In this document: positions 2,136 to 63,461 of the stretch, in pieces
How positions within the stretch are numbered: position 1 is the first letter of the stretch
Layout: the number at the start of each line of letters is the position of its first letter
Origin: Macrostomum lignano
Taxonomy: Eukaryota
DNA: 64,000 nucleotides
Assembly: GCA_002269645.1 (NCBI GenBank)
Contig: NIVC01000561.1
Span: 372,001 to 436,000, forward strand
Direction of reading: 5' to 3'
The notes under the pieces: generated by a model
Seen by the model: the letters and a program-made list of their open reading frames with translations, nothing else
What the model was told of the DNA's origin: nothing
The model's database searches: none
Made by a program: the position numbers and the translations under genes

Positions 2136-5100
2136 TCAGCCCTCAGCATCCTCTTGCGGTCCGGGCAGCTGCCGCATCTCGCCAGCTTCATCCTCAGATC
2201 TCAGCCTCTCAGCTGCATCCAGCGCCATTGACAGCACCTCCATGCCTAGGCTTAATGCTCTCTCATCCTCAATCTGGAATGGTGGCAAAGGCACAACAGT
2301 GAAATTCACAAAAACTTTACTGACAATTCAATCACCATCTGCTGTTTCAAGGATTTACAACTGCTGCAACTTTACATGGCTACCTAAATTGAAATTGGAT
2401 AAAAAAATTGTTTAAATTAAATTCAGACGTACGAATTCATGGATTCGCTCGAGAAAAGGCTGTAGAGAAGATGGCAAGTCAGGGTCGCTCGGTACGGCAT
2501 CGATTTCTGACTGCAGGAACTGCTGCAGGGCCTGCGGATCCGCGGCTTCGGCTCTGAGGTTGCGGAGGTCTTCTGGTGTCTCATCATGCAGGATGCAATG
2601 CAGCACACCCGCCAAAGAGTTTACGATGAAGCTCCGAAACTCAGGAAAATTTTCAACCTGTAATTTCAGAATGTTTACGAAAGTCAGGGGAGAAACACTG
2701 AACAATTATTGAGGCAATCTTACCGAAATTAAAATAACATCAAGAAGTTGCGGAAACTGCTCAAACATTTCACTTATAGTTTCGAAAAGGCAAATTAAAC
2801 TCCCAACACGCATTTCCGATATTGTCATCCAAACTTTGCTGGACACAGCTGAAATCATTTCCAGATTGGGCTCAACATTCTGCGACTCAGTTAAAGCTGC
2901 CTCATCCTGAGCAGCCAGACTCGCCAGAAGTTTTCTAAAATCTACTTGGGGAATCAGCAACCGGCCAAGTTCAGGTGCAAAATTGTCTCGGATGATAATC
3001 CTGAATATCTTCTTGACGCGAGATGGCAGGAATCCAAAATCCAGATTCTCTTCGAACACAAAATCCGGGATCGTGGCGGAGTCTGTTGTCTCCTCCAGGT
3101 GCCGCCACACGAGCTCCTTCGCCTCGCCCACCGACAGCAGCTCGCTGCCTCCGCCAGGACTCTCCGGACACTCGATGCCGCTGCTCTCCTGGCCCGTCAG
3201 TCCTGCTGCAGCACCGGCCGCATCCAGCGGTGCTCCGACTTTGAGATGCGCCATCAACCTGAGGCTCTCTCTGGCTGATCTGGCGCAGTCTGGCAGCTCA
3301 CCGATCAGCTGCAGCAGCTCCGACAGGTGCTCGGACTCCGACTGACCCCGCCGGTCCGAGCCGAGTTTAAGCAGGTAATGCCTCACCAAGCCGTAGATTG
3401 AGCTGTAGTTTGAGTACTGCTGCGCGTAATTTAACAAACCGATATTCTCCAAAATCTGGAAAGGCTCGAACCGCACAGAGTTGCTCGCATTTTCTTTCAA
3501 CTGGCCTTGGAATCGATGCAGCCAGAGAGGAAGCTCTTCAATCACCCCATTGACCGCATCCACAATGTCTTTCTTCGGCTGCTGACCCTTCTTGAAGTAC
3601 ACGTCGGCATCTCGTAGGAAGAAGTGCTTCATGCACACTGCATCGGAGTCTGAGCTCTCCATCATCTCAACCAGCAGCTGCAGCGACTGCCGCACGAGTT
3701 GCAGCAAGTTGTCTGGCTTCCATTCTTCTTCCGGCGTCTCGTCGAGCATGTAGAACAGCAGGTTCTTGGCCATGTACGTCTTCAGACCGCTCACCTTCAT
3801 CTCGATGCTGATCACCTTCTTGATGAGGAACTTGACGAGGATGAAGAACTGGCCCTGCACGGTGGTGAGGCTGTGCATGACGGCTCTCTCCAGCAGGGTT
3901 GTGCTCACCCGCATGCAGCTGCCAGGCCGTTTGTGAGGAGGCGACGCAGCGACCGCGTGGCACTTTGGAGAGTCGCCGAGAGCCTCCTGGTTGAGCTGGT
4001 TCAGGATGCGCTGAGACATCTGGGACGGCTGGCCTCTGCGGTTTGTGTAGCCGGGCTGCAGCAGCTCAATGCGGGGGTAGCGGCAGCAGGGCACGGCAGG
4101 TATTAAATCGATATTCACTTTAGTCGAAGAAACCAATAAACACTCTGCCGGTGACTCTGGTGAGGATTTCATTGTTGCCATGTTGGGTCCTGTTGCTATG
4201 AGTGTGTAGAAATGTGTGTTTAGCCTCATAAATTCTGCCTAAGACAATACGAGTACGAGATTAATTGCGGCGTTCTGTGCTAGTCTCTATGGGTAGATAC
4301 CACACCACCCACCCTAACTACAGCAGGCTGTGCGAATGCCAAGACTTCACGCAGACAATTCTGCCAGTGTAGGGCCCGTGTGGCACTGCAAAGCGCACGA
4401 AACAAGCAGAGCTCTCAGCGACCATCTACTAACCATTGGGCTTATACACTTAAAAAGCTACTGGTTTATAACATCTCTATGCTCGTGATATACAAGCACT
4501 GAGCTAGCTACTCACAGCCATGCTCATAGTAGGCGTGTCCGTTCTCGCACTGCACTCGGATCGCATCTCCGCCGCAGCCACTGCAGGCGGTCCAGCCGGC
4601 AGAGCCGCAGTCCAGGCACAGAAGTCTATCGGACTCCATGAAGGTGACGTCAATGTCGGAGTCCGGACTGATCTCCCCGTTCAGAGTCTCCAGGCTGCTG
4701 CCCCATCCGTCTGCGAAGCTGCCGAACACGAAGATGTTCTTGTTGTCCATCAGGTCTCTCAGGATGTCCTGCAGCACGGCCGCAGCGCCGCTCTGAACTG
4801 CCGCGTTGGCCTGCTTGAACCCGGCGGCTCGCATGGCTTCGGACAGCCGCGAGCTGAACTGGCGCTGCTCCTCCGCTGACCGGACGGTCGGCGCTGCGAG
4901 CGACGCTGCGGCTGGGCGGGACGGCTCTGGGGCTGAGAAAATTGAGGAAATTAAACTGATAATCGCATCCGGTGGGATTTCTTCTCCGGCAGCAGCAAAT
5001 GCCTTTCTGACTGAGTCATTGCCTGGCAACGTAATAAGATACGAAAGCTTGAAAATCCACGGTCCTGTCTGATCCCAGCTGACACCAGCATCGATCAGAA

Positions 5101-6571
5101 GTTGCACCGCCTCTGTGAAACCAGCCCGGATAGCATCTTCAAACCAATTTATTCTGGTTTTTTCATTGATGTCGGCAGAAGCCTCAATCAGCATGCGAGC
5201 CATAGACAGCTGCCGATCCGAAATGGCCAGACTGACCAAATCCTTGTTGTTATTGCTGCTCATATCGACTGAAGCTCCAGCTCGAATCAGCTCGCTGACG
5301 ATCTCTTGGTTTTCTTTATTAACGGCCAGGGCCAGGGGAGTTCGGCCATTGCTGTTCAGGAGGTCGACCCTGGCTCCAGCTCTGAGCAGCATAGCAACCA
5401 GCTCTGCTCTTCTTTTATGAACTGCTATGTGCAGCGGCGTGTCGCCATCCAAGTCTTGAGCGTCGACATTCGCCCTGGCACCGATCAGCAGCTTTGCGAT
5501 CTCCTTACAACCACACCTGACTGCGAGATGAAGAGGCGTTAAACCGAGCCATAATGATGAATCCACATTGGCTCCGGCTCTGAGGAGAACTGCGGCTCCC
5601 TCAGTCGCACGGTCGCTTACCGCGGCAAGTTGAAGAGGAGTGCAGCCTTCGTCTGCAATTTCGAAATTCACACCTGCGCTAATGAGTTGGCTCATGACGT
5701 CAATGTTCCCAGATACTAAAGCCACATGCAGTGGAGTTGAACCATGAGGACAGTTCGGGTTTCGCCTGTCGGGATCTGCAGCGGCACTCAGCAATATTCG
5801 AACGATTTCGGCATTGTCCTGTCTTGCTGCAGCGCTCATCGCTGGCCCGCCTTTCCGGTCAACATGACTCCGCTGCGCTTTGATCAGACTCAGCAGCGCT
5901 TTTTCAAGCCGCAGAAATATACTCAGACGAAAAGCATCTGTCAGAGTACGCGGCAGTTTCAGAAGGGCCTCCAACTCGAGCTCCGAGGCGCAGCAGTTCG
6001 AGTCCGCTCCGGCGGCAGTCAGGGCGTCCACAGCTCCAGCCCGGCCGAGCATGACGCACAGATACAGCGGAGTCGGCAGCGGCCCGGCAGCTCCCGAGAC
6101 CGGCGGCGGCTCCTGACGGCTGTCGGTGGCGGCGCAGGTCGGTCCGGCCAGCAGCCGCGCGATGTCGTCGCCGGACTCAACGGTCGCGGCCAGGTGCATC
6201 GGCAGGGCGCCGCCCACCGTCCGGACGGCTGGACTCGCTCCGGCTCGCAGCAGCAGCCGCGTCAGTCGCTCGCTGCCACCGAGGACGGCCTCGTGCAGCG
6301 GCGTAGAGCCGTCAGCTGCGGCCAGGTCGACGTTCGCGGAGGCCTCCACGAGCAGCCGCGCGGCTTCTGCATTTCCTAGAAAGCTGGCGACGTGCAGGAA
6401 GGACCTGCCGTTAGAGTCCTGCTCGTCAGGACTGCCGCCACGGCTGAGCCACTCAGTGGGGAGGCCGCAGTCTCCCGAATCGAGCGACTCGAGTACCGAC
6501 TCGAACTGCGGCGGCTCAGGTGGGTCGAGAGGTCGCTCGGAGGGGGCCAAAGGCGGTTCCTGGGCCGTCAT
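2136..6571 (-). CDS. Ankyrin-repeat / cGAS-Mab-21-like nucleotidyltransferase (cGLR-like) protein, copy 1, ~1296 aa, 4 coding exons
   Basis: Exons 6571-4516, 4195-2724, 2657-2433 and 2273-2136 join in frame through GT-AG introns of phase 1, 0, 0 (donors gtgagt, gtaaga, gtacgt). Exon 1 has ~12 ankyrin repeats (e.g. GSTPLHEAV, GLTPLHLAV, GDTPLHIAV) followed by VFGSFADGWG..SDIDVTF. Exon 2 has VNIDLIPAV (third Asp), MRVSTTLLERAVM, KTYMAKNLLFYML..W and CMKHFFL, which match the Mab-21/cGAS C-lobe pattern. The start codon is uncertain: an acceptor-like site at ~6602 and a strong donor at ~7385 may indicate an extra 5' exon. Confidence 0.85.
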
Positions 6572-7969
6572 GACTTTCTGTGCTGCACTGTGCTCTGTTT
6601 CTAAGAAATGAAGTGTGAGGTGAAGCTTTAACAGTCCCCAACCTTTTGCTTTTTGGCCCCACTCGCACCGAGAGCAGAATTCGCTTGTGAGCACTCGTGC
6701 AGCAACTCTAACCGTATTCCTTCCTGCTCAGGACTCACCTGTGACCAGGGGGAGCGAGGGCTCTGCCGAACGCCCTGTGGTTTTGTGCAGACAGTTGAAA
6801 GAATGAAATTCAACAGCAAGGTGTTTTGTTGTGCGTCTTTCTGCCGGTCAGACAGACCTGGCTGTCTTGAAGCCAAATCGCACAAATATATGCAGTGCCA
6901 TCGCTTGTGCTGCAAGAGTGGCGCCGTGTTAAACACTGTAAACTGAAATTTTATGAGCAAATCAGTATTAATAAATTTAAAGCTTCTATAAACGGAATTC
7001 GTTAACTACATACGAGTACAGGTCCTTGCTATATTGCTGCTGCAGTCAGCTGTCTGTTTTCAATACCCAGTGCAGTGTTTATATTGAACACGAAACATTT
7101 ATTGCGCACCGACTGCAGGACGGCGTCTGCATAGCAACTAATTCACACCAAATATCGGTGTCAAGCTTTTAATGGGCATTTGGTTTTAACGGAGTCACAG
7201 AATTTCCAACTCTTGGATTCATTTCAAACACTTGAGAACCAGACCGCCCCAATCAGACCCAGTGGTTCATCAGGCTTTAGTGCATCATATGTTGGATTTA
7301 TGCAACTGTTACACAATGATTGATTCTGACAATCAAGTACCCTAAAAGCATCCTAAATGAGGTAAATCATACGCCTGTCACTCACCCATCATCAGAACCA
7401 TGAAAATTTGCGCCGTTGTTCATGAGATGGTGAGATTGCATTCGTACATTGCCGTCCCATGTGCAGTGTTTAAATTGCACTTTTCCCTGCCTACATGAGT
7501 AAGGCCTCAGCTTGTAGCGGCGCCTTGGAGGCAGACTCGCTTTTATGGCCTTCAACTGCATCTCACATAAAGAGCCGAGCTCTGCTAAAGACCTGCAAAG
7601 ATCATCCTTGAACTCATTCACCTTTGTTTTCCACAATTGTTGTCTTTTAATATTGATAATCAGTGATTTTTATATATATTTGATGGATTTATTTATTCAT
7701 TTATTCATTTACTTACTTATTTATTTATTTATTGATGAATTGATGAATTGTTTGTTTAATTGATTGATTGATTATTTGATTTTTTGATTGATTGATTGGA
7801 TTTGATCTATTCAACACAGCAAATTTTCGAGTGTAAGAAAGTATAGTTTTAGTATAAAAAAGCAATTAAAAAATTTCTGTTTTGGTACATCTCCATCTCA
7901 AGGTCGGAGCTGTTTATCGTCACTGACTGTCTCGCTAGAATCGAATCGAAAAGTAGTATCGGGACTCAT

Positions 7970-8306
7970 TCATCCCCCAACCAGAGGTAGTTGATCCCAG
8001 ACAAAATACTTTAAAACCTCAGATTTAAGACTCTCAGCTGCAACCAGAGCCCTGAGCAACGACTCCAAGATTGGGTTCAGGTCTCCTTCATCAGCAAGCT
8101 GGAATGGCTGCAGATGCTCAACACTGAAATTTCCTTTAACTTAGTGAAATTCAATCATTATAATCTATTTCAAGGACTTTAAACTGCTGCAGTTGTTATA
8201 ACACTAAATTGAATTGTCGCTATTTGAGAAATTATTTTCTTTAAATTCATTCAAATTTGAATCAACGAGTCAAGAAATTCGGGCAGGGCCAGCCTGTATG
8301 AAGAAC
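7970..8306 (-). pseudogene. Remnant of a third ANK-cGLR paralogue (end of exon 3, intron 3, exon 4)
   Basis: 8098-7970 reads LADEGDLNPILESLLRALVAAESLKSE..QLPLVGG*, homologous to copy 1 exon 4 and behind the same ccattccag acceptor. 8100-8250 aligns with copy 1 intron 3 (tcaatttag..tgcagcagtt..tccttgaaa..tgattgaatt). The exon 3 equivalent appears to carry a stop (NFLTR*), lacks the donor and is cut by a minisatellite. Confidence 0.65.
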
Positions 8307-8712
8307 CGCCAAGAGACAGGGGCGCCCACCAAGAGACAGGGGGGCCCACCAAGAGTCAGGGGCGCCCACCAAGAAACAGGGGCGCCCACCAAGAGTCAGG
8401 GGCGCCCACCAAGAGACAGGGGCGCCCACCAAGAGACAGGGGCGCCCACCAAGATACAGGGGCGCCCACCAAGAGACAGGGGCGCCCACCAAGAGACAGG
8501 GGCGCCCACCAAGAAACAGGGGCGCCCACCAAGAGTCAGGGGCGCCCACCAAGAGACAGGGGCGCCCACCAAGAGACAGGGGCGCCCACCAAGAGACAGG
8601 GGCGCCCACCAAGAGACAGGGGCGCCCACCAAGAAACAGGGGCGCCTACCAAGAGACAGGGGGCGCCCACCAAGAGTCAGGGCGCCCACCAAGAGACAGG
8701 GGCTTTCACCAA
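8307..8712. repeat. GC-rich minisatellite, 20-bp unit (ggggcgcccaccaagagaca), ~20 copies
   Basis: Direct tandem copies; they explain the repeat-derived ORFs 8214..8753 and 8262..8612. Confidence 0.95.
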
Positions 8713-9990
8713 GAATTGCAAACTGCGATATGTCGGAAGCAGCTGTCCAGTGAGTTCTGGGCTGCCACGCCTCACTCTGATGGGTGTGCGATCGCCCCAT
8801 CTGACCAATGCACACGCAATCAACGGTTCATTATTTTACCTTTGAACTGACAGTGAGGAATGAGTGTTTGAAAACAATTAAGTGCACAACAAAATTTGTT
8901 TTTTTCGTAGTGTATTCTTTAGCTACGAGGTTAAATTTAGGTTTTATTTGGCTAAAAAGTATTGTCAAATTTCCAGCGTCCAAATTCACAGATTCCGGTG
9001 TGACGAATATTTTGGTCTGACGTAAGAGGTCGCGTCCTGACGGGCTGCTTAGCGAGTTAGCAAATTAGCGAGGGAACACGGAGAACCTTGATTGTGATCG
9101 ATTACGAACAGGTAGATTATTTAATTATTTGTATTTTTCTCAAACTTGAATGGTAGTGGTATAATAATCACATGCAATTTATTGAGCAGGCAAAAAACGA
9201 ATCAGGTTTGGGTAGATCTGGCGGGTAGAGTTCTTTAACAATAGTCACTGTAATGAACTTGCCAGCGGTATCCTCCAAAGCCACAGAAATTCAAAATGTT
9301 AAATATAACTATTATAATTCAGTAAAACAAAGTATTGTTTGCCAATTGTCAATAATCATAGGAATACAACCAATTGATAGAGATAAAATACACATTTTAA
9401 TTATTTTAGTGAATATACGTGTAAAAAGAAGAATTGGATAGGTAAAGGAACCGTAGGTGTTTAAATTAATCTCAACAATGACAAAAACTATTGATAAAAA
9501 CCGACACTAATTCAGTTATGTATGCTCTGCAACATTGAAAAGTCGCCACTCTATGCGGCAGTGAGCAATTTCTCTTGGACTGTTCTGAAGTAAAAGATAC
9601 GAAAAAACTGATCGGGGTGGCTTTAATTCAGACTACTGTGCAAGTATTTCACGCAAAACTTACACATTTTCCACAAATGAGCTTATTTAATCAATATCTG
9701 ACACTTATAACACAATGAAACGGACAGTGTACTAGAGCTAGTATGCTATATATACTACTTGGAAACAGTCCGAAGTGCCACCTTGCCTGCAAGTAGATAT
9801 TTTTCGCTCTTCTCACTGCGAATGACGCAACTTTTGGAACTCTGAAGTTGTATTGTCACTGGTAGGGCCGGGTCACGTGTCTGCTAAGGTGTATGTAGAT
9901 TAAGAGGACAAATCTTCAATCCATTTAAAACTCATGACGAACGCTAAACGAGGGCGTGCTGTTGAACTGCTAGAATTCAGTGTGGGTGAA

Positions 9991-10266
9991 TCAGTGAAAC
10001 TGCTTCAAGATTTCTTGTATCGCAAGCAACAATTCGAACGCTGCTGACACAAAGTCCCGCAAGACTGGTGGCTCTGAAAGGTAGTCAGTGCCTTCATCTG
10101 CGTGGGTCAGCAGCCAGAGCTGATTGTTTTCTGCTGCGAGTTGCAAGGAGCAACCACCTTTATGGGTAACTTGTGGATTGAAGGTTGAATGAGGAGTTCT
10201 CTTTGACAAGCAGCGTAGGTAAGATATGCGCAGGCTGGCACTTTGACAGTTGCTGAGTAAATACAA
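9991..10266 (-). pseudogene. Possible degenerate fragment of the 3' end of ANK-cGLR exon 2
   Basis: Weak similarity by eye: PQV..LAAE and IQEILKQF versus copy 1 PQV..LAAQ and ISEMFEQF. Confidence 0.3.
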
Positions 10267-10674
10267 ATTACAGCATACAAGATATAGTCCACTGCCCGTC
10301 CCATTGAGTAGGGAGAGACTGCAGGAAGTACATTACAGCAGTAAACTGTGATTTCGTAATTGTACATTGGAAAGATTAAAATTTAATTATTCAGAAATCG
10401 ATCGCATATGGATATATGAACATACAAAGAAACCATTTTTAGTATATGGATCTCTGAGAATCAGTAAAATTTCAGTGAGTCGTAGGGTGAGAACAAGATG
10501 CAGGTATGAGAGCATAGCAAGGTGATGCCTCACACAGCAATCAGTGAGGCACCTCAGCTCCAAGAGTAACAAAACAATTCCGCATACCGCAGTGGTCAAA
10601 CTCAGATGACAGTCTGATAGAGCAAAAATTCATCTTGCCGCTGCGAGTTGACAGGCTAAAGAGAAAAATGAAAG

Positions 10675-13600
10675 TCAATCCAGCGGCTCCTCCTGCAGCC
10701 CAGGGAGCTGCTGCATCTCGGCAGGCTCAGCCTCGGATTGCAGACTCTCAACTTCATCCAGGGCCAATAGCAGAGCGTCTCGAATGAAGTTTTCATCAAA
10801 CAGCTGAAACAGGAGGGATTTCCAAAACTGTGAACATTGCTGGACAAAAAGTATGGCTGGCATTTTTGTTTACTTGATCGAGACATCAAAAGTTACTCGT
10901 ATTTACAAAGTTATGCCTTTTGATGTTAGAAATTATCATTAATTGGGATTACCGATTTCAAGAATTTAGTGAAAAACGATCTAGAAGCTTCATCTGACTG
11001 CAAGAACTGCGGAAGCGATTGGCTAATTAGGGTGTCCAAATACAACTGCAGCAAGATTTGCTGCAGCCCTTGATTAGGCACAACTGCAGCACGAAAGAGG
11101 CGGATGCCCTCAGGTGGCAGCTGTCGAAACAAATGGCGAAAAAATCCTGAAATTGAATTGTTCCTTCGGCTCCGAAATTCTGGGTTTGCCAGCACCTGAA
11201 AAATATAAAGATTAAAATCGAAAAGCATAAACAAAAAACCAATGATGTGAAGTGTGACAGTCAAAGTAAAAATTCAAATGAAATCTTACTAATGATGTGA
11301 CAAAAAGAAAGAGATTTGGAAACGCCTGATGCATCCGACGGATCATTCCAAAATAATCGAGCCAAGCCCCATTTTCAAAACGTTCAGCCAGATGAAAAGC
11401 GTCGCAGCGCTGAAAAGCTGCGGCAACATGAATATTTCTGTCGATGTTTTGCGACTCCAATGGGGCTGACTCCCGGCCAGTCAGCGAGTCATGAAGCCGG
11501 ACAAAGTCTACTAAAAGCAGCACTGTCTCACTGACAGGATGGAGAATGATAAAATGTTGCTTTGAAGCAGCTGGCAAGAATCCGAAATCCAGTTTCTCTT
11601 CGAATAAAAACTGAAGCACTGCGGCAGAGTCGGTCTCCTTCAGGTGCCGCCACACGAGCTCCTTCGCCTCGCCCACCGACAGCAGCTCGTTGCCTCCGCC
11701 AGGACTCTCCGGACACTCGATGCCGCTGCTCTCCTGGCCCGTCAGTCCTGCTGCAGCACCGGCCGCATCCAGCGGTGCTCCGACTTTGAGATGCGCCATC
11801 AACCTGAGGCTCTCTCTGGCTGATCTGGCGCAGTCTGGCAGCTCACCGATCAGCTGCAGCAGCTCCGACAGGTGCTCGGACTCCGACTGACCCCGCCGGT
11901 CCGAGCCGAGTTTACGCAGGCAATGCCTCACCAAGCCGTAGATTGAGCTGTAGCCTGAGTACCGCTGCACGTCACGTGAAAAATGAAAGTCCCACAAAAG
12001 CCGGAAAGGCTCGAACCGCACAGAGTTGGTCGCATTTTCTCTCAACTGGCATTGGAATTGATGCAGCCAGCGAGGAAGCTCGTCAATCACCCCATTGACC
12101 GCATCCACAATGTCCTTCTTCGGCTGCTGACCCTTCTTGAAGTACACGTCGGCATCTCGTAGGAAGAAGTGTTTCATGCACACTGTATCGGAGGCTGAGC
12201 TCTCCATCATGGCAACCAGCAGCTGCAGCGACTGCCGCACGAGTTGCAGCAAGTTGTCTGGCTTCCATTCTTCTTCCGGCGTCTCGTCGAGCATGTAGAA
12301 CAGCAGGTTCTTGGCCATGTACGTCTTCAGACCGCTCACCTTCATCTCGATGCTGATCACCTTCTTGATGAGGAACTTGACGAGGATGAAGAACTGGCCC
12401 TGCACGGTGGTGAGGCTGTGCATGACGGCTCTCTCTAGCAGGGTTGTGCTCACCCGCATGCAGCTGCCAGGCCGTTTGTGAGGAGGCGACGCAGCGACCG
12501 CGTGGCACTTTAGAGAGTCGCCGAGAGCCTCCTGCTTGAGCTGGTTCAGGATGCGCTGAGGCATCTGGGACGGCTGGCCTATTGAGTAGCCGGGCTGCAG
12601 CAGCTCGATGCGGGGGTAGCGGCAGCAGGGCACGGCGATTATGCGATCGATATCCACATGGGTAGGAAGAAGCTTTGAGAACTCTGGTGATGGTTGATTT
12701 GTCGCCATGTTGGGTCCCGTGGCTGTGAATGTGTAAAAGGGTGTTGTTTGCTTAAGAAACAGTTGACTGAATGATTTTTGCACTTTAATTTATCTTGATT
12801 CCAGCAAAGACTCTCTTGCTGCATTAATGCTTGGCGCTGCCATGCATTGTCATTTGTTATTTCTGTGGCTACTTTAGTAATCCACACACCAAATGCCGAT
12901 ATAATTTTTCTTCATTAGCTGGGTGCAGCTAAAAAGGAAAGAGCACGGAAAGGCAAAAAAACTAAGGGGGGATTATCACAAGCCTGAAATATCATAACTC
13001 CTAAATTGATAGCAACACTCATTATAAACCCAAACTATCATAAACCAGAAAAACAGAACTCCGAAGGTTCTACAATAGCAATGTAGCAACATTGTAGCAA
13101 TGTCCAAAACTATTTTAGTTTTCGGAGTTGTGATATTTTAAGTTTTTTTATATTTCGGGTTTATGTTGGCGAACCGGAGCCTCCAGGCCACACGTTAACT
13201 ACAGCAGTTAGTGTGAATGCCAAGGCTTCACGCAGACAATCCTGCCAGTGTCGGGCCCGTGCTGCACTGCAGAGGGACCAGGAAACTTGGAAAAACAAAT
13301 GCTCTATATCATGACATGCTCAGGAAGCACTGAGCTATACTCACAGCCATGCTCATAGTAGGCGTGTCCGTTCTCGCACTGCACTCGGATCGCATCTCTG
13401 TCGCAGCCACTGCAGGCAGTCCAGCCGTCTGAGCCGCAGTCCAGGCATAGAAGTCTATCGGACTCCATGAAGGTGACGTCAATGTCGGAGTCCCAGCTGA
13501 TCTCCCCGTTCAGAGTCTCCAGGCTGCTGCCCCATCCGTCTGCGAAGCTGCCGAACACGAAGATGTCCTTGTAGTCTATCAGGTCTCTCAGGATGTCCTC

Positions 13601-15289
13601 CAGCGCGGCCGCAGCGCCGCTCTGAACTGCCGCGTTGGCCTGCTTGAACCCGGCGGCTCGCATGGCTTCGGACAGCCGCGAGCTGAACTGGCGCTGCTCC
13701 TCCGCTGACCGGACGGCCGGCGCTGCGAGCGACGCTGCGGCTGGGCGGGGCGGCTCGGGGGCTGGGAAGAATGCGGAAACTATACTGATAATCGCATCCG
13801 ATGGCATTTCCGCTCCAGAAGCAAGCAGCAACTTTCTGATTGAGGCATTGCCTGGAAACATAGTAAACAACGACAGCATAAGGCCCATCGGTCCTGTCTG
13901 ATCCCAGCTGACACCAGCATCGATCAGAAGTTGCACCGCCTCTGTGAAACCAGCCATTAAGGCAACTGCAAACCACTCTGAGCTGTTTTTCCCATCGATG
14001 TCGGCAGAGGCGTCAATCAGCATGCGAGCCATGTACAGCTGCCGACGCTCGATGGCCTTGCTGACCAAATCCTCATTGTTATTGCTGCTCATATCGGCTG
14101 AAGCTCCAGCTCGAATCAGCTCGCTGACGATCTCCGGGGATGTTTTATCAACAGCCAGGGCCAGGGGAGTTTTGCCATTTCTGTTCAACACGTCGACCCT
14201 GGCTCCAGCTCTGAGCAGCATGGCAACCAGCTCTGCTCTTCTTTTATCAATTGCAATGTGCAGCGGCGTGTCGCCATTGGGGTTTCGAGCGTCGACATTC
14301 GCCCCGGCAGCGATCAGCAGCGTCGCAGCCTTCTTCATATCCGTTTGGACTGCGCCATGAAGAGGCGTTGAACCGAGAATTAAAACATGGGCTACGGCTC
14401 TGATGAAATCTGCGACTGCCTCAGTGCTCAAGTCGCTTGCCGCAGAAAGTTGATGAGGAGTGTCGACTTTTTCGTTCATTGTTTCGACATTCACACCTGC
14501 GCTAATGAGCTGGTTCATGACGTCAGTGTTCCCAAATATTACAGCCTCATCCGATGGAGTTGAACCAAGAGAGCAGCTCGGGCTCCGCCAGTCGGTATCT
14601 GCAGCGGCACGCAGCAATATTCGAACGATTTCGGCATTGCCCAGTTTCACTGAAGCTTTGATCGCCGGTCCTACAAAATAATCAATCAGACTAAGCGGAG
14701 CTTCTATCGGAACCAACGGCAGTTTCAGAAGGGCCTCCAGCTCGAGCTCCGATGCGCAGCAGTTCGGGTCCGCCCCGGCGGCAGTCAGGGCGTCCACAGC
14801 GCCAGCCCGGCCGAGCAGGACGCACAGATACAGCGAAGTCGGCAGCGGCCCGGCAGCTCCCGAGACCGGTGGCGGCTCCTGACGGCTGTCGGTGGCGGCG
14901 CAGGTCGGTCCGGCCAGCAGCCGCGCGATGCCGTCGCCGGACTCAAAGGTCGCGGCCAGGTGCATCGGCAGGACACCGCTCACCGTCCGGACGGCTGGAC
15001 TCGCTCCGGCTCGCAGCAGCAGCCGCGTCAGTCGCTCTCTGCCACCGAGGACGGCCGCGTGCAGCGGCGTAGAGCCGTCAGCTGCGGCCAGGTCGACGTT
15101 CGCAGAAGCCTCCACGAGCAGCCGCGCGGCCTCTGTGTTTCCTAGAAAGCTGGCGATGTGCAGGAAGGACCTGCCGTCAGAGTCCTGCTCGTCAGGACTG
15201 CCGCCATGGATGAGCCACTCAGTGAGGAGGCCGCAGTCTCCCGACTCGAGCGACTCGAGCACCGACTTGAACTGCGGTGGGTCCGCCAT
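10675..15289 (-). CDS. Ankyrin-repeat / cGAS-Mab-21-like nucleotidyltransferase (cGLR-like) protein, copy 2, ~1249 aa, 4 coding exons
   Basis: Exons 15289-13345, 12722-11290, 11195-10953 and 10803-10675 join in frame with the same intron positions and phases (1, 0, 0) as copy 1. Same ankyrin block, same VFGSFADGWG..SDIDVTF, VDIDRIIAV at the third Asp, and a near-identical Mab-21 core. Exon 3 starts VLANPEFR (copy 1 VENFPEFR); exon 4 ends EMQQLPGLQE (copy 1 EMRQLPGPQE). Confidence 0.85.
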
Positions 15290-18141
15290 GATTGTCTGTG
15301 CTGCCTTTTTACTGATTTTTGGTGCCACAAATGTTTATTGCCAGTTTTTTGTAAGAAGCTCCAGCTCTGGTTGATAGGAAGAATTTCTTATTTTTCTGTT
15401 TTCTTATGCTTTATCCAGACAGTTAAGTGCTTATGGCTATGTTGAAAGCAACAAAGCGAGCGGGCGACAACTGTGGTGGAAATATTGATAATAGACTCAA
15501 TAGAGTCTGGTTTTTTCCGTGTATTTAGTTTACTGTTGCAGTTGTTTATGCCGTCCAGATGATGAGAGCCTCTGATTGTCACGTGATTTACTAGGAGAGA
15601 GATGAAAAGCTTTCTTATTCTTTTGTACGAGTACTTCTGCTCTCCTTCTTGCTGTTCGACGTTTTGAGAAACCGAAGTTCAATCTTGACGACCTTGCTTC
15701 GAACCTTTAATATTTGGGCTGAGTTACTTTTTTATTTAAGTTTATTGTTAAACTTTTCTTAGTTGCATGGAATAAACTACTGGCAGAATCAGTTAATCAA
15801 TTAAATAGCAAAAAACGTGTGCTGTAGCCGATATATGCAGGTTTGCATGTACTTTTCATGATACAGTACTGATGAAGGGTTAATCACTTCACTAGCTAAC
15901 TGCAATGTCAAATGAATAATTACAGTCGATTGTCCTGTTGCCGACGATGTACATCGTAAACTACAAGTAGTACATGTGCTGACTCTTACTGCAAGGTAGT
16001 AAACATGCATTATAAGTTAACCGTCTACCTTTGCAGTTTGTTGCTCATCAGATAACAGAACTGGGTAAATTCTGTGCATCCGGCTACTGCATCTCAAGTT
16101 TTTATTGCCATTTTAATCATTTTAAGAATTGGTTTTTGGTATCTGCACTATGTCGACCAATTAACCATTCTTAATTGTTCACATTTAGTTTTCATTCGCA
16201 ATGATGTAGATACGTTACGTTTCTAATACGGTGCATGTACATGTAGTAGCCGATGTACTGCAGCAGGTCGTTATTCTACAAAGCAAATCTAGCTGCGGCG
16301 ATGCAGACTTAAGGCTTCGGTACAAGTTAGAAGATGCAGAAGAGGGACTCGATCTGCAGTCCCAAATGACTTACATGTAAATTTCTTGAAGGCTGGGAAT
16401 TTAAAATGAATGTCATCTGTGCCGACTGTACTCCACTGAAAACCGATTAAACCGAGTAACCATGTCGACGAAGGACAGAAGAAGCTCCACTATGCTAGCA
16501 TGCAATCAAGCCGTGGCATGCATCCACTAGCCTAATTAGAGACAGGGGCGCCCACCAACAAGCAATACATGTATCTGCTCGCCAAACAAAACTCACTTAC
16601 AATTATGTAGTGAGCCCATTTCTGAACAGTTGATGCATTATATATATTTAGCTCGTACTGCAAGCGCAGACAACAATTAATTCAAGTTCTTTCACGGATT
16701 TTTTTCAAGTAAACATGACATGATTGTGATCGAAACTTCATGTATTAACTGGCATGATACTTACTATAAGTAAATTTCTGCACAGGTACACTGTACATGC
16801 GCGCACGTCCCGCAGTTAACTTTTATTTTAACCGAAGGCTATTTCAATATCGCAAGTTTCCCAATCTTTAACTGTTTAAATATATTTTCCCAATTTTTAA
16901 GGGTTCAACAAGTCGGCGGGCCCCTACGAGAAGTTTTGGAACTTCAGAAAATTCGGAAGAAATTCGAAAAGTTCCAGAGAATACTGAAAAAAGACATGTA
17001 TAAACGAAATATTTTTGTCCTTGTGTAATTGTATTTTATAGATCGAGTATCTCAGGCTCGGAGCTTGAACTCGAGGAACACTCTGCGGGTCAAGATAATC
17101 GACTGATCTCCTGGGAATATCAAGGACTACTTAAGAAGTGTTCTTAATTCTTATGGGGAATATTTCCTGGATCTGCCACTGCTTGCTTTCGATTTTTTAA
17201 ATTGTTAAAATTTCGTTTAAATAGTTTAAACCGGCAGTTTGTAACATTTTAACGAACAAAACGTTTTGTGAACTTTCTAATGCGTTACTTCTTTTTTAAA
17301 AACAAAAATCCTGATTAATTTTTCATTTTAAAAAAGAAACATCTTTAATACAGTTATCGTTGACTTGCGTTGCTAATATTTTTAACAGTAAGATCTCTTG
17401 ATATTTTTTCACAAGTAACACGCAGTCACCGGGATATGCGTGATTACATAACTTCCGTTACGTCCGCTTGTCAGTCTATAGAGTAGCCTAGAATTTATAT
17501 CGTTTGATTACATTACTAATGAATGTCGGTTAATCTAAGGTTACTAAAGCGAAACTCATAGTATTGGTTCGAAAAGTATTCGTAGTTTAGCATTAGGCTT
17601 ATGCCGCTTATGTCAAGTTGCCTTCGTATCAATTAGTCAAGTTGCCTTTAATTTAGGTTGGGTTTAGGTCATGCCAATTCATACTTTGGCATGAATCTTC
17701 TTAGCTCTAGATAGCTATTTTATACTTTTAAGTTTTTCATATTAATCAAGATTTTTCAATGTAAAATCCACATACACTGATGTTCTAAAACCTTATGGAA
17801 TAAGCCCCCCTACTTTAATTTTTTGTAGCTTAGCTTTGTTTTCTACTCTAACTGGGTTGGGCCACTGGCCTATTATGATATTTTTATTTTTTAGTGTTTC
17901 ACAAGGTATATGTATAAAATTAAATCTAAATTTAATTGATATAGGCCTATGCATTATATGTATTGATTTGTTTAGATAATTATAGATTTTTGTTTTCTAC
18001 GTTGACTTTGTGCAGTTAGACTTGTTAAATGTATATAGAATATTTAATAATATATCTAGGCCTATCAAATTTTAAAGCATAAACTTATTAATTCTTTTGC
18101 ATGACAGCAAGAGACAATCATAATTTGCAAAACAATATCTC

Positions 18142-27539
<9,398 letters not shown>

Positions 27540-47214: not shown

Positions 47215-50200
47215 ATGAAATTACCTTGGCGGCCTTCGGAGGCTGCATGTCAACTGCCCATCGGCGGCATCAGGAGCCCGTCAACCACTCGATATTCGGT
47301 CGTGTTCCTGGCTATATTGGCCGTCTACAATGTGGCCGCTTGGCTGTTGTTCGGCTCGCAATATCCTTGGCGGGCTCTGTCTGCCAGGGCTAATGTGCTG
47401 TTCGTGTCTGAGCTGGGTGAACTGCTGGCCATCTGGCTGCTGTGGCGCTGGGTGCATCCGGGACGCGACATTTGGGAGCGAATCGTTGGCATCTTGATGA
47501 CGCCTGTGTATCTGGGGACTGTGCTGGCCCTGCCTGCGGGTCTGCTGCTGTCGGGCGGAGCTCAGGTTGGGCTGGCTTTGAGTCATGATTCACGCCATTC
47601 GGTCACCTGATTCACGCCATTCAGTCATATGATTCACCTTATTTAGTAACCTGATTCACGCATTTCAGTCACCTGATTCACATCATTCAGTCACCTGATT
47701 CAAATCATTCAGTCACCTGATTCAAATCATTCAGTCACCTGATTCAAATCATTCAGTCACCGGATTCACATCATTCAGTCACCTGATTCACATCATTCAG
47801 TCACCTGATTCAAATCATTCAGTCACCTGATTCAAATCATTCAGTCACCGGATTCACATCATTCAGTCACCTGATTCAAATCATTCAGTCACCTGATTCA
47901 CATCATTCAGTCACCTGATTCACATCATTCAGTCACCTGATTCACATCATTCAGTCACCTGATTCACATCATTCAGTCACCTGATTCAAATCATTCAGTC
48001 ACCGGATTCACATCATTCAGTCACCTGATTCACATCATTCAGTCACCTGATTCAAATCATTCAGTCACCGGATTCACATCATTCAGTCACCTGATTCACA
48101 TCATTCAGTCACCTGATTCAAATCATTCAGTCACCGGATTCACATCATTCAGTCACCTGATTCACATCATTCAGTCACCTGATTCACATCATTCACTCAT
48201 CTGAGTCACATTTACTCATCTGATTCACATCATTCATTAGTGAGGCGCACTTTTTCCCAGTGACGTCACCCATTCACGCCGCCCCCAACCGCAGGTGAAT
48301 CCGCTAGTGCTGGCCTGCTACATCTGCGGCGGCCAGTGCCTGCAGTTTACATTTTACGCTCTGCTCGCGCACTGCTTGTCAATGTGCTATCGATTCTTGA
48401 TCGGCACGCGGCTCGGTCCGATGCTCAATAAAGGATTTTTTTGCGCAGCTCTGCCATTGGCTGTTTCGGTTGCCATGACAACTGCTGGACTGTCCGGCGT
48501 GAGCAGCTCCGCCCTGTCTGCGGGTCGCGGCATTCCAGTTCGTCGGATCGACATCGAGCTGCCTCGGCTGCCTTCATCGATGCGCGGCCTTCAAGTGGCT
48601 CTGGTGTCCGACCTGCACATCGGCCCGACTGTGGGTGTACCTGATGTGGCCGGGCTGGTCACCCAGTTGAACGGTTTGAAGCCGGATGTGGTGGCTCTGG
48701 TTGGCGATCTGGCTGACACGCCTGGCACTCAGTTTCTCAGCGCTGCGGCTCCGCTAGCCAATGTTCAGGCTAAGCTGGCCAAGGTGTACGTGACTGGCAA
48801 TCACGAATACCTGACTATGCGGCCCCAGGCTTGGATTCGGGCTGTTGCTGCTGCCGGCTTCCAGCCTCTGGCCAATCAGGCTAGGTGAGGCTGCAGGACT
48901 GGATGAGTCTGGGTGACTTAGATGAGGCTTGATGACTTGGATGAGGCTGGATGACTTAGATGAGGCTGGGTGACTTAGATGAGGCTGGGTGACTTAGATG
49001 AGGCTGGGTGACTTAGATGAGGCTGGGTGACTTAGATGAGGCTGGGTGACTTGATGAGGCTGGGTGACTTAGATGAGGCTGGGTGACTTAGATGAGGCTG
49101 GGTGACTTGATGAGGCTGGGTGACTTAGATGAGGCTGGGTGACTTAGATGAGGCTGGGTGACTTAAATGAGGCTGGGTGACTCAGATGAGGCTTGATGAC
49201 TTAGATGAGGCTTGGTGACTTGGATGAGGCTTGGTGACTTGGATGAGGCTGGGTGACTTAGATGAGGCTGGGTGACTTAGATGAGGCTGGGTGACTTAGA
49301 TGAGGCAGGGTGACTTAAATGAGGCTGGGTGACTTGATGAGGCTGGGTGACTTAGATGAGGCTGGGTGACTTGGATGAGGCTTGGTGACTTAGATGAGGC
49401 TGGGTGACTTGGATGAGGCTTGGTGACTTAGATGAGGCTGGGTGACTTGATGAGGCTGGGTGACTTAGATGAGGCTGGGTGACTTAGATGAGGCTGGGTG
49501 ACTTAGATGAGGCTGGGTGACTTGATGAGGCTTGGTGACTAAATTGAGGCTGGGTGACTTAGATGAGGCGACTCAGATGAGGCTGGGTGACTTAGATGAG
49601 GTTGGGTGACTTGATGAGGTTGGGTGACTGGATGAGGCTGGGTGACTAGATGAGGCTGGGTAAGGCAGGGCTGCGTCAGACACTGGGTGAGTATTTATTG
49701 AATATTTGATAAGGTGCCTGGAGACTGAGTAGGTTACCTGATGAGGCTAGTAAGAGGCTGGGTTAAAGACTAGTTGAGGCTGAATGAAAGACTTGATATG
49801 GCTGACTGGAAACCATGGCAACCGCTCTTCCCCATCGCAGACGCATAGGCGGCCTCTGTCTGGCGGGCGTCAATGACCAGTTCGCGGACGTGGCCACGGA
49901 CTCGGCGGAGCTGCACTACAACCTGAGTGCCGCCCTGTCTGCTTGCAGACCCTCTGACGCGGTGGTGCTGCTGGCACACCAGCCCAGCGTTGCTAAGGAC
50001 GCCATCTCGTCCGGTGCCAACGTGGATTTGATTCTGTGCGGCCACACCCACGCTGGGCAGTTCTTCCCGCTGACCATTCTAGCTAAGCTGGTGTTCCCCT
50101 TCAACTACGGGTATTACAGGGTGGGCCGCTATCAGATCTTTGTCACCTCCGGTGCCATGTACTACGGGCCACCTTTGAGAACTCTTACTCAGCAGGAGAT

Positions 50201-57455: not shown

Positions 57456-63461
<6,006 letters not shown>

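What the first reader, a model, noticed from the sequence alone, without database searches (positions are those of the whole stretch)
2136..15289. Tandem cluster of ankyrin-repeat-fused cGAS-like receptors (ANK-cGLR): candidate invertebrate innate-immune sensors
Seen in sequence: the ORF track splits each gene into an ankyrin ORF and an unrelated-looking ORF, but a conserved phase-1 intron (4515-4196; 13344-12723) joins them in frame in both copies. The product is one ~1250-1300-aa protein: ~12 ANK repeats, then GS-x20-DID...D, then a Mab-21 helical lobe and a helical tail. Established: the hG[S/G]..[D/E]h[D/E]..[D/E] triad defines Pol-beta-fold NTases, including cGAS, OAS and cGLRs, which make nucleotide second messengers. 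Inference: all three acidic catalytic residues are intact, so these are probably active cGLRs. The ankyrin array may replace nucleic-acid binding as the sensing or autoinhibitory module, detecting proteins. I cannot check whether this exact architecture has been described in this lineage.
Basis: partly seen in the sequence, partly recalled or inferred. Interest (0 to 1): 0.88.

Follow-up and report, generated by a model that had tools for sequence, protein, structure and literature searches.

The report
Flatworm ankyrin-fused cGAS-like receptor gene pair
Two neighbouring flatworm (Macrostomum) genes each encode a long ankyrin-repeat array fused to a cGAS-like enzyme with an intact active site; they are real, but this gene type and this flatworm family are already catalogued, and their function is still untested.

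Summary
Two minus-strand, four-exon genes (2136-6571 and 10675-15289) encode 1296- and 1249-aa proteins with about 12-13 ankyrin (ANK) repeats. These are followed by a nucleotidyltransferase (NTase) N-lobe (GS-x20-DID), a third Asp and a Mab-21 C-lobe. The conserved phase-1 GT-AG intron sits at the stated coordinates.

The cGAS-like receptor (cGLR) assignment is supported:
- Pfam Mab-21_C scores at its threshold.
- A family profile hits cGAS in the PDB (E=2e-5).
- The nearest relatives outside the family are bona fide Mab-21 proteins.
- A confident AlphaFold model of the 88%-identical M. lignano counterpart (pLDDT 89) matches only Mab-21-family structures in the listed top 50, led by Cv-cGLR1 and cGAS.
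- The catalytic motif is intact in 57 of 65 paralogues.

The window is Macrostomum. A syntenic tandem locus exists in M. lignano (PAA90449/PAA90450).

Novelty is low. Li et al. 2023 list ANK-cGLR fusions as a known architecture. Their domain table holds ankyrin hits for PAA-prefixed accessions, the prefix of M. lignano proteins. They also cloned five M. lignano cGLR domains, one 48% identical to ours. None is among the 15 active enzymes they describe.

Activity, ligand, product and downstream receptor remain inferred. The acidic core (pI about 5.6-6.0) and fast-evolving ankyrin array (dN/dS about 1) fit non-nucleic-acid sensing but do not show it.

The parts
2136..6571 (-). Copy 1 gene (ANK-cGLR, 1296 aa). 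Exons 6571-4516, 4195-2724, 2657-2433 and 2273-2136.
   Evidence: Spliced model is open over 3891 nt with all introns GT-AG. It is 72% identical over its full length to M. lignano PAA90450.1 (P0002). Its start and stop match that annotated model.
4997..6409 (-). Copy 1 ankyrin-repeat array, about 12-13 repeats, residues about 55-525.
   Evidence: Pfam Ank_2 E=4.8e-56, Ank E=5.1e-54. Repeat count by inspection of the translation. dN/dS against the M. lignano counterpart is about 1.0.
4516..4897 (-). Copy 1 NTase N-lobe, encoded in exon 1 in the same ORF as the ankyrin array. Holds GS (4718-4723), DID (4649-4657) and a CxxC-x7-CxxC insertion (4574-4618).
   Evidence: Coordinates. G, S, D and D are invariant in A1 and at least 90% conserved in A3 with bona fide Mab-21 proteins. 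In the AF2 model, GS follows strand 1 and DID lies on strand 81-87.
4196..4515 (-). Copy 1 intron 1 (320 nt, phase 1, GTGAGT...TCATAG). It splits the NTase domain.
   Evidence: The same junction residue appears in annotated M. lignano proteins.
2724..4195 (-). Copy 1 exon 2. Holds the third catalytic Asp (D715, 4107-4109), the Mab-21 C-lobe (Pfam PF20266 hit at residues 814-895, about 3567-3812), a post-core helical region and the start of the tail.
   Evidence: Mab-21_C scores 24.1-26.1 bits against a cut-off of 24.1. The profile hits cGAS at E=2.1e-5. The third Asp lies on strand 151-160 of the model.
2136..2657 (-). Copy 1 exons 3 and 4 with introns 2658-2723 (66 nt, holds an in-frame TAA) and 2274-2432 (159 nt). 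They encode the C-terminal tail, which has no recognisable domain.
   Evidence: The tail has no Pfam or PDB match. The C-terminus QLPGPQEDAEG is identical to that of P0002.
10675..15289 (-). Copy 2 gene (ANK-cGLR, 1249 aa). Exons 15289-13345, 12722-11290, 11195-10953 and 10803-10675. Introns 12723-13344, 11196-11289 and 10804-10952.
   Evidence: It is 73% identical to M. lignano PAA90449.1 (P0004), the upstream gene of the syntenic pair.
13345..13711 (-). Copy 2 NTase N-lobe: GS 13547-13552, DID 13478-13486, CxxC-x7-CxxC 13403-13447.
11770..12722 (-). Copy 2 third catalytic Asp (D674, 12646-12648), Mab-21 C-lobe and post-core helices.
   Evidence: The core is 92% identical to copy 1 with dS about 0.03, which points to gene conversion.
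6572..10674 (.). Intergenic spacer between the two copies, including a 20-bp satellite at 8309-8714.
   Evidence: TRF. The same satellite lies within the M. lignano locus: a short array between the two annotated genes (L001 6139-6265) and a long array at 22740-25566.

Best explanation
These are two tandem paralogues of a large ANK-cGLR gene family that the databases searched hold only from Macrostomum.

**What is shown**
- Each gene encodes a cytosolic-type protein in which a 12-13-repeat ankyrin solenoid is fused, within one exon, to a cGAS/Mab-21-fold nucleotidyltransferase. No signal peptide or transmembrane domain was noted, but this was not specifically tested.
- A family-specific helical extension and tail follow the enzyme domain.
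- The gene structure, domain architecture, fold-family membership and conservation of the G-S / D-x-D / D catalytic constellation all rest on tool results.

**What is inferred**
- The enzyme is competent to use NTPs. Like other cGLRs, it probably makes a cyclic or linear oligonucleotide second messenger.
- It is normally held inactive.
- Its activating input is not double-stranded nucleic acid. More likely it is a protein or other ligand engaged by, or relayed through, the fast-evolving ankyrin array, by relief of autoinhibition or by induced oligomerisation.
- The product then acts on an as yet unidentified receptor, either STING if Macrostomum has one or something else.

**Evolution of the locus**
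- It evolves by tandem duplication.
- The catalytic core is homogenised by gene conversion.
- The middle and C-terminal ankyrin repeats and the tails diverge.
For: - **Gene models.**. The same exon junction is present in annotated M. lignano proteins.
- **Family assignment.** Pfam Mab-21_C reaches its gathering score. The single sequence hits Sp-cGLR1 (8gjy; identified) at E=0.009. The family profile hits cGAS at E=2.1e-5.
- **Wider search.** The exhaustive profile search gave 879 hits. Of these, 76 clusters score E<=1e-30, and all 30 proteins looked up are M. lignano. The next tier are PF03281+PF20266 Mab-21 proteins.
- **Structure.** AF2 of the 88%-identical counterpart core with a 57-sequence alignment gave pLDDT 89.4 and pTM 0.90. 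GS sits at the strand-1/helix turn, DxD on strand 2 and the third Asp on the neighbouring strand.
- **Fold comparison.** All 50 Foldseek hits listed are Mab-21 family: Cv-cGLR1 at E=2.6e-6, then cGAS, MAB21L1, Sp-cGLR1, MiD51 and MB21D2. No TUTase, PAP or OAS appears among them.
- **Catalytic motif.** It is invariant in A1 and intact in 57 of 65 family members.
- **Non-nucleic-acid input.** The core pI is 5.6-6.0 and the whole protein 4.85. Li et al. 2023 report pI >8.5 for dsDNA/dsRNA-sensing cGLRs and propose non-nucleic-acid ligands for acidic ones.
- **Ankyrin as the variable module.** Identity between the two copies is 63-68% in the middle and C-terminal ankyrin repeats against 92% in the core. 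dN/dS is about 1.0 in the ankyrin array against 0.58-0.68 in the core. An N-terminal extension with ankyrin motifs is the majority architecture in the family.
- **Synteny.** The tandem arrangement is shared with M. lignano NIVC01000110.1.
Against: - No activity data exist for these proteins.
- Li et al. 2023 cloned five M. lignano cGLR NTase domains, including PAA57558.1, which is 48% identical to ours. The 15 active enzymes they describe came from other phyla. Either the isolated domains are inactive with dsDNA and poly I:C, or they were not pursued.
- Pfam's Mab-21 NTase-lobe model (PF03281) does not hit these proteins.
- The GS-to-DxD spacing of 20 residues is longer than the roughly 11 residues of human cGAS (that figure is from my own knowledge, not a tool result). 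The 'FGS...SDIDV' wording also resembles non-canonical poly(A) polymerases (my own knowledge), although the Pfam hits there are below threshold at E=0.03-0.2.
- dN/dS is high overall, about 0.8. Relaxed constraint could explain this as well as diversifying selection. Gene conversion also distorts dS.
- Copy 2 has several degenerate ankyrin repeats.
- The structure model is of the M. lignano counterpart, not the window protein, and the catalytic geometry could not be measured.
- No STING or other receptor was found or sought successfully.
Confidence: 0.6

Rival explanations
1. The proteins are non-enzymatic Mab-21 scaffolds. The Mab-21 domain would act as a nucleotide-binding or purely structural adaptor, as in MiD51 or MAB21L1, and the ankyrin array would recruit partners. 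No second messenger would be made.
For: MAB21L1 and MiD51 are among the Foldseek hits with scores similar to cGAS. No flatworm enzyme is among the 15 active cGLRs described by Li et al.. Some paralogues have lost the catalytic residues, for example P0078, P0068 and P0070.
Against: G-S, D-x-D and the third D are kept in 57 of 65 paralogues despite divergence to about 25% identity. Li et al. describe the MAB21L1/2/3 genes as lacking a predicted functional active site; that MiD51 also lacks the full acidic triad is my own knowledge. Conservation of exactly these residues is hard to explain without catalysis.
Confidence: 0.17
2. The enzyme is active but is not a cGLR-type signalling synthase. It would be a template-independent RNA or protein nucleotidyltransferase (TUTase/PAP-like tailing, or NMPylation), targeted to substrates by the ankyrin array.
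For: There are weak sub-threshold Pfam hits to MTPAP-like_central (E=0.027-0.21), NTP_transf_2 and Polbeta on the N-lobe. The 'FGS...SDIDV' wording is PAP/TUTase-like (my own knowledge). One chimeric M. lignano model is labelled 'PAP-associated domain-containing' (P0012).
Against: The C-lobe is Mab-21_C, not PAP-associated. All 50 structural matches listed are Mab-21 family, with no TUTase or PAP. The nearest relatives outside the family are PF03281+PF20266 proteins. P0012 is visibly a chimera interrupted by transposon-like sequence.
Confidence: 0.08
3. One or both window copies are decaying members of an over-expanded family, that is, nearly neutral or incipient pseudogenes, with no current function.
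For: Overall dN/dS is about 0.8, and about 1.0 in the ankyrin array. Copy 2 has degenerate ankyrin repeats, such as 'TPSDEAVIFGN' in place of 'TPLHxA'. The family is very large and many database members are fragments.
Against: Both copies keep open reading frames of about 3.8 kb across four exons with intact GT-AG sites. Catalytic residues are intact in both. Core dN/dS is 0.58-0.68, below 1. The syntenic M. lignano genes are annotated as full-length.
Confidence: 0.1
4. The long protein is a gene-model artefact. The ankyrin ORF and the downstream ORF would be separate genes.
For: A raw ORF scan splits them. No transcript data could be checked here.
Against: The GS/DID half of the NTase is in the same ORF as the ankyrin repeats, and the third Asp and C-lobe are in the next exon, so neither ORF alone encodes a complete domain. 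The phase-1 GT-AG intron is conserved in both copies. Annotated M. lignano proteins use the same junction. AF2 folds the joined sequence into one confident bilobal domain.
Confidence: 0.03

Closest known systems
ANK-cGLR fusion proteins catalogued by Li et al. 2023 (Cell; bioRxiv 10.1101/2023.02.22.529553), for example in Stylophora pistillata, with PAA-prefixed (M. lignano-type) entries in their domain table
   Same: An N-terminal ankyrin-repeat array is fused to a Mab-21/cGLR NTase with a predicted functional active site. Their Table S2 lists Ank_2 hits for PAA67649.1 and PAA58690.1. PAA is the accession prefix of every M. lignano protein looked up here.
   Different: The window genes themselves, and their counterparts PAA90449/PAA90450, could not be found in the stored supplement, which is truncated. 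No ANK-cGLR has been characterised functionally in the searchable literature.
M. lignano cGLR constructs #89-93 of the Li et al. 2023 biochemical screen, especially #91 PAA57558.1 (Mlig007108g1)
   Same: They belong to the same paralogue family. #91 is 48% identical over about 500 aa to both window proteins. It shares the GSFxDGWGxxL...SD[IV]D motif, the 'PCCxYP' motif and a near-identical C-lobe.
   Different: The constructs are NTase domains only. #91 comes from a 585-aa model with no ankyrin array. They are not among the 15 active enzymes described.
Cv-cGLR1 (PDB 8GJW), Sp-cGLR1 (8GJY) and vertebrate cGAS
   Same: They share the bilobal Mab-21 fold and are the best structural matches. The G-S / [DE]h[DE] / [DE] active-site constellation lies on equivalent secondary-structure elements.
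   Different: - Sequence identity is only 9-19% in the Foldseek alignments, and TM-scores are 0.4-0.57.
- The core is acidic, whereas Li et al. report pI >8.5 for nucleic-acid-sensing cGLRs.
- The GS-DxD loop is longer. There is a CxxC-x7-CxxC insertion in the N-lobe.
- A helical extension of about 75 aa and a tail of about 290 aa follow the core.
- The N-terminal ankyrin array has no counterpart in these proteins.
Human MB21D2 / MAB21L1 / MiD51 (orphan or non-catalytic Mab-21 proteins)
   Same: They share the fold and appear among the Foldseek hits. Like MB21D2, the ligand is unknown.
   Different: The window proteins keep the full acidic triad. Li et al. describe the MAB21L1/2/3 genes as lacking a predicted functional active site; that MiD51 also lacks the triad is my own knowledge.

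Membership tests
cGLR / Mab-21 family (cGAS-like receptors) | Mab-21 C-terminal helical lobe (Pfam PF20266) | tested here: met
   PF20266 scores 24.1 bits on the full protein, equal to the cut-off, and 26.1 bits on the core. The family profile hits cGAS chains at E=2.1e-5 over the same helices. Paralogues score 21.6-28.1 bits.
cGLR / Mab-21 family (cGAS-like receptors) | Pol-beta NTase N-lobe with hG[GS] ... [DE]h[DE] ... [DE] on the canonical strands | tested here: met
   G617-S618, D639-I-D641 and D715 in copy 1; 580-581, 602-604 and 674 in copy 2. These are invariant in A1 and at least 90% conserved with bona fide Mab-21 proteins in A3. Their positions on strands were read from the AF2 model of the 88%-identical counterpart. 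Distances were not measured because no coordinates were available.
cGLR / Mab-21 family (cGAS-like receptors) | Recognition by the Pfam Mab-21 NTase-domain model (PF03281) | tested here: not met
   There is no PF03281 hit at E<=1 on the window proteins. The link is only transitive: the family profile retrieves PF03281+PF20266 proteins at E about 1e-15.
cGLR / Mab-21 family (cGAS-like receptors) | Bilobal cGAS-like three-dimensional fold | tested here: met
   The AF2 model has pLDDT 89.4 and pTM 0.90. All 50 Foldseek PDB hits listed are Mab-21 family, with Cv-cGLR1 at E=2.6e-6 and cGAS at 1.1e-5. This was done on the M. lignano counterpart P0002, because the tools refuse spliced window proteins.
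cGLR / Mab-21 family (cGAS-like receptors) | Ligand-activated synthesis of a nucleotide second messenger | not testable with these tools
   This needs a biochemical assay. The literature gives no positive result for any Macrostomum cGLR.
cGLR / Mab-21 family (cGAS-like receptors) | A cognate downstream receptor (STING or equivalent) in the same genome | not tested
   No gene in the window matched an immune or receptor family among the ORFs scanned. M. lignano is absent from Li et al. Table S5, and literature searches found nothing.
ANK-cGLR fusion architecture (Li et al. 2023) | Ankyrin repeats and the cGLR NTase in one polypeptide | tested here: met
   The ankyrin repeats and the GS/DID motif lie in the same uninterrupted ORF, 4508-6694 in copy 1 and 13304-15328 in copy 2.
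Non-canonical poly(A) polymerase / TUTase | PAP/TUTase palm domain plus PAP-associated C-terminal domain, with structural similarity to them | tested here: not met
   Only sub-threshold N-lobe hits were found: MTPAP-like_central at 12-15 bits against a cut-off of 27. No PAP-associated domain was found. No TUTase or PAP appears among the 50 Foldseek hits listed.
2'-5' oligoadenylate synthetase (OAS) | OAS-type C-lobe and structural similarity | tested here: not met
   There is no OAS Pfam hit and no OAS among the 50 Foldseek hits listed.

The most novel reading that the evidence does not exclude
The Macrostomum ANK-cGLRs would be an NLR-like, massively diversified receptor family. There are at least 76 clusters at 50% identity.
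- A hypervariable ankyrin solenoid, not a basic nucleic-acid groove, would give each paralogue specificity for a pathogen or host 'guardee' protein.
- Ligand binding would switch on synthesis of a nucleotide signal.
- That signal would be read by a non-STING pathway. Catalytically dead paralogues fused to a caspase (PAA93319.1) hint at a direct link to cell death.

This would be a new activation mode for cGLRs and a new immune repertoire in a phylum said mostly to lack cGLRs.
Probability: 0.2. Interest if true: 0.75.

Novelty: new member of a known kind. Interest (0 to 1): 0.38.

Why it matters
cGLRs are a major family of animal pattern-recognition receptors, but most are orphans. Only dsDNA and dsRNA are established ligands.

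ANK-fused, acidic cGLRs are good candidates for sensors of something other than nucleic acid. Macrostomum lignano is a tractable laboratory flatworm with RNAi and transgenesis (my own knowledge) that carries dozens of them.

The window adds two intact, precisely modelled members. It also documents how the locus evolves: tandem duplication, a core homogenised by gene conversion, and divergent ankyrin repeats and tails.

It does not reveal a new kind of system. The architecture and the flatworm family are already in the dataset of Li et al. 2023, and UniProt already labels relatives as Mab-21 domain proteins.

Tried and rejected
- I did not try to get round this. I used the allowed M. lignano counterpart core (P0002, 88% identical to copy 1's core) instead.
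- **First AF2 run unusable.** With a 5-sequence alignment it gave pLDDT 42.7. It was not searched. It was redone with 57 sequences.
- **One Pfam call failed.** It exceeded the residue limit.
- **TUTase/PAP and OAS readings rejected.** See the membership tests.
- **C-terminal tail (residues about 1010-1296).** A profile of nine paralogue tails found nothing significant in the PDB (best E=0.17) or in Pfam. Its function is unknown.
- **Very long family members.** P0033, P0049 and P0088, with WSC, RING and homeodomain hits, look like merged gene models from an older assembly. They were not used as evidence.
- **Counterpart accessions in Li et al.** PAA90450, PAA90449, PAA80900, PAA93879, PAA93319 and PAA83064 were not found in the supplement. 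Three of the files are truncated in the library, so absence means nothing.
- **STING in Macrostomum.** Literature searches gave nothing. A database search was not attempted, because hits cannot be filtered by organism and no query sequence was to hand.
- **Species identity.** The 3' half of copy 1 and its downstream flank are 92.5% identical to M. lignano DV1. The proteins are only 72-73% identical to the syntenic genes, and no exact match exists in the protein collection. The window could be a homeologous or unassembled M. lignano locus or a sister species.

Full report

Yes. The six-frame scan shows two pairs of long minus-strand ORFs: 4508-6694 with 2706-4229, and 13304-15328 with 11212-12783. 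Reading the minus strand, I built both genes and translated them.

- Copy 1 has exons 6571-4516, 4195-2724, 2657-2433 and 2273-2136. It encodes 1296 aa.
- Copy 2 has exons 15289-13345, 12722-11290, 11195-10953 and 10803-10675. It encodes 1249 aa.
- All six introns are GT-AG.
It is phase 1 in both copies and gives the same junction, YYEHG-S-TGPN.
- The motif is as described: G617-S618, 20 residues, D639-I-D641, then D715. In copy 2 the residues are 580-581, 602-604 and 674.
- Pfam finds strong ankyrin signal (Ank_2 E=4.8e-56). The translation shows about 12-13 repeats.
- tblastn finds only these two copies in the window.

One refinement matters. The ankyrin array and the GS/DID half of the NTase are in one exon and one ORF. 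The fusion is therefore visible without any splicing. The intron cuts the catalytic domain itself, so neither ORF alone is a complete enzyme.

**2. Where does it come from?**

The only close relatives in 5.8 billion clustered proteins are Macrostomum lignano (free-living flatworm) proteins at 40-85% identity. They are named 'hypothetical', 'ANK_REP_REGION' or 'Mab-21-like HhH/H2TH-like domain-containing'.

- The annotated proteins P0002 (PAA90450.1) and P0004 (PAA90449.1) carry the same exon-1/exon-2 junction.
- They lie in tandem on NIVC01000110.1, in the same order as the window genes. A third, unannotated copy lies downstream.
- Window 4118-1, including the non-coding 3' flank, aligns to that locus at 92.5% identity.
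- The whole proteins are only 72-73% identical to the syntenic genes, and no exact match exists.
- The window is therefore a homeologous or unassembled M. lignano locus, or a sister species.

**3. What is the enzyme domain?**

Sequence evidence:
- Pfam Mab-21_C (PF20266) scores 24.1-26.1 bits against a cut-off of 24.1.
- phmmer against the PDB puts Sp-cGLR1 (8gjy; named) first at E=0.009.
- A seven-sequence family profile hits cGAS chains at E=2.1e-5.
- PF03281, the N-lobe model, does not hit. Only sub-threshold PAP-like and NTP_transf_2 signals appear there.

An exhaustive profile search of 1.84 billion representatives gave 879 hits.
- 76 clusters score E<=1e-30. All 30 proteins I looked up among these and the other hits are M. 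lignano.
- After a gap, the next tier has E of about 1e-21 to 1e-11. Among the sampled proteins of that tier outside M. lignano, all four carry PF03281+PF20266, and one of them also has the TPR fusion that Li et al. list as a cGLR architecture.

Structure evidence:
- The tools refuse spliced window proteins. I therefore modelled the core of P0002, which is 88% identical to copy 1's core.
- A shallow alignment failed (pLDDT 42.7).
- A 57-sequence alignment gave pLDDT 89.4 and pTM 0.90.
- In that model, GS sits at the end of strand 1 and the start of a helix. D81 and D83 lie on strand 81-87, and the third Asp lies on strand 151-160. This is the canonical Pol-beta NTase arrangement.
- Foldseek against the PDB lists only Mab-21-family structures in its top 50. 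Cv-cGLR1 (8GJW) leads at E=2.6e-6, followed by cGAS, MAB21L1, Sp-cGLR1, MiD51 and MB21D2. No TUTase, PAP or OAS appears.
- TM-scores are moderate (0.4-0.57), as expected given the insertions and a helical extension of about 75 residues.

That criterion is not met, so the cGLR-family reading stands.

**4. Is it likely active?**

- G, S, D-x-D and the third D are invariant among paralogues down to 26% identity.
- They are at least 90% conserved when bona fide Mab-21 proteins are added.
- They are intact in 57 of 65 family members that cover the region.
- The exceptions have clear substitutions. P0078, for example, has DIN and a Thr in place of the third Asp.

This pattern argues for catalysis in most members, including both window copies. 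It is inference, not demonstration.

**5. What is known already?**

Li et al. 2023 (bioRxiv 10.1101/2023.02.22.529553, PMC9980059; the Cell paper on cGLR diversity) cover much of this ground.
- They list ANK- and TPR-fused cGLRs as recognised architectures (Fig 1C, S2A, Table S2). They show ANK and death-domain fusions in the coral S. pistillata.
- Their Table S2 contains Ank_2 hits for PAA67649.1 and PAA58690.1. PAA is the accession prefix of every M. lignano protein looked up here.
- Their Table S3 shows five M. lignano cGLR domains cloned for the biochemical screen, #89-93.
- #91, PAA57558.1, is 48% identical to both window proteins over about 500 residues.
- #90, PAA45980.1, is cut from a 936-aa protein whose close cluster relatives are labelled ANK_REP_REGION-containing.
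- The 15 active enzymes they describe are from insects, anemones, molluscs, hydras and corals.
- The text notes that 'most platyhelminthes' have no cGLR beyond Mab21-like proteins. Macrostomum is the exception within the phylum.

I found no paper that characterises an ANK-cGLR or discusses Macrostomum cGLRs.

**6. How might it work?**

- The core is acidic (pI 5.6-6.0) and the whole protein has pI 4.85.
- Li et al. report pI >8.5 for dsDNA/dsRNA-sensing cGLRs. They propose non-nucleic-acid ligands for acidic ones.

The two window copies are mosaics.
- The first four ankyrin repeats and the NTase/Mab-21 core are 90-92% identical, with dS of 0.03-0.08.
- The middle and C-terminal ankyrin repeats are 63-68% identical, with dS of about 0.22.
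- The tails are 36% identical, with dS of about 1.4.
- This suggests that gene conversion homogenises the core while the ankyrin repeats and tails diverge.

Against the syntenic M. lignano genes, dN/dS is about 1.0 in the ankyrin array, 0.58-0.68 in the core and 0.7-0.77 in the tail.

An N-terminal extension is the majority state in the family, and most of these extensions carry ankyrin motifs. In a crude motif census, 46 of 59 members have an extension of at least 84 aa (Pfam on samples).

The most economical mechanism has four steps:
1. The enzyme is a cGLR held inactive.
2. The ankyrin solenoid is the variable ligand-recognition or autoinhibitory module, sensing a protein or other non-nucleic-acid cue.
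3. Activation leads to synthesis of a nucleotide second messenger.
4. A receptor not yet identified reads that messenger.

I give the composite reading about 0.6. Identity as an ANK-Mab-21/cGLR-family gene is about 0.95. Catalytic signalling is about 0.55-0.6. Ankyrin as the sensor is about 0.4. The rivals are a non-catalytic scaffold, another NTase chemistry, decay, and a gene-model artefact. They are weighed in their own sections.

**7. What remains unknown?**

- The tail of about 290 residues has no Pfam or PDB match.
- A CxxC-x7-CxxC insertion in the N-lobe might bind zinc. It is not at the position of the cGAS zinc thumb (that position is from my own knowledge). It is not conserved across the wider family.
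- The STING status of Macrostomum could not be determined.
- The neighbouring genes are ordinary: a subtilase, a sulfotransferase, a metallophosphoesterase and an ammonium transporter.

**8. Verdict**

The family assignment is well supported. The functional reading is plausible but untested. The novelty is modest, because this is a new pair of members of an already catalogued architecture in an already sampled lineage.

Interest is 0.38. What remains interesting is that ANK-cGLRs are functionally orphan, and that Macrostomum offers a large, fast-evolving repertoire of them in a tractable animal.

Noticed in passing
M. lignano protein P0078 (PAA93319.1, 2111 aa); not in the window: This paralogue is annotated as ANK + Mab-21 domain + ANK + C-terminal caspase (Peptidase_C14, E=2.8e-27). 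Its NTase motif is degenerate (D-I-N, and the third Asp replaced by Thr), so it looks like a catalytically dead cGLR module fused to a caspase. It could hint at a cell-death output, or it could be a merged gene model.
   Followed up: partly
window 2136-6571 compared with 10675-15289: Divergence between the two copies is mosaic. dS is 0.03-0.08 in the first four ankyrin repeats and the catalytic core, about 0.22 in the middle and C-terminal ankyrin repeats, and about 1.4 in the tail. This pattern suggests recurrent gene conversion of the core, or exon or segment shuffling among paralogues.
   Followed up: partly
L001 (M. lignano NIVC01000110.1) about 18110-21800: A third, unannotated ANK-cGLR copy lies downstream of the two annotated genes in the syntenic M. 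lignano locus. The window ends about 2.1 kb downstream of copy 1's stop codon, so a third copy could lie just outside it.
   Followed up: partly
window 4574-4618 and 13403-13447: A CxxC-x7-CxxC motif (CLDCGSAGWTACSGC), followed by C...GH, is inserted between strands of the NTase N-lobe. It may be a small zinc-binding knuckle. It is present in the closest paralogues and only partly kept in distant ones.
   Followed up: no
window 2658-2723 compared with P0002: The 66-nt intron 2 of copy 1 contains an in-frame TAA and must be spliced. The annotated M. lignano protein P0002 reads through the equivalent intron in frame, adding 'RLRHNYLLSVSPLTFVTILNFQ'. That is probably intron retention or an annotation slip.
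   Followed up: partly
window 8309-8714; also 1-213 and 19038-19533: A 20-bp satellite of about 20 copies lies between the two genes. It recurs as a short array between the two annotated genes of the M. lignano locus and as a long array further downstream. The 24-bp satellite at 1-213 also matches arrays in that locus, downstream of copy 1's counterpart (L001 17490-17998). A different 24-bp satellite lies at 19038-19533.
   Followed up: partly
window about 20000-62800: There are many long minisatellite and low-complexity arrays with extreme strand skew (GC skew down to -0.68 and up to +0.52). They produce spurious repetitive ORFs in several frames.
   Followed up: no
window 25067-25555, 43594-44247, 48295-48885, 57456-60900 (all + strand): The neighbouring exons encode a subtilase (Peptidase_S8), a sulfotransferase, a calcineurin-like metallophosphoesterase and an ammonium transporter in three exons. 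None of the ORFs scanned matched an immune-related family.
   Followed up: partly
protein P0109 (MES9883983.1, 'MAG: Sedimenticola sp.', 3.9-kb contig): A 766-aa protein with Mab-21 NTase and Mab-21_C domains is deposited as bacterial. It is most likely animal-host contamination of a metagenome-assembled genome.
   Followed up: no
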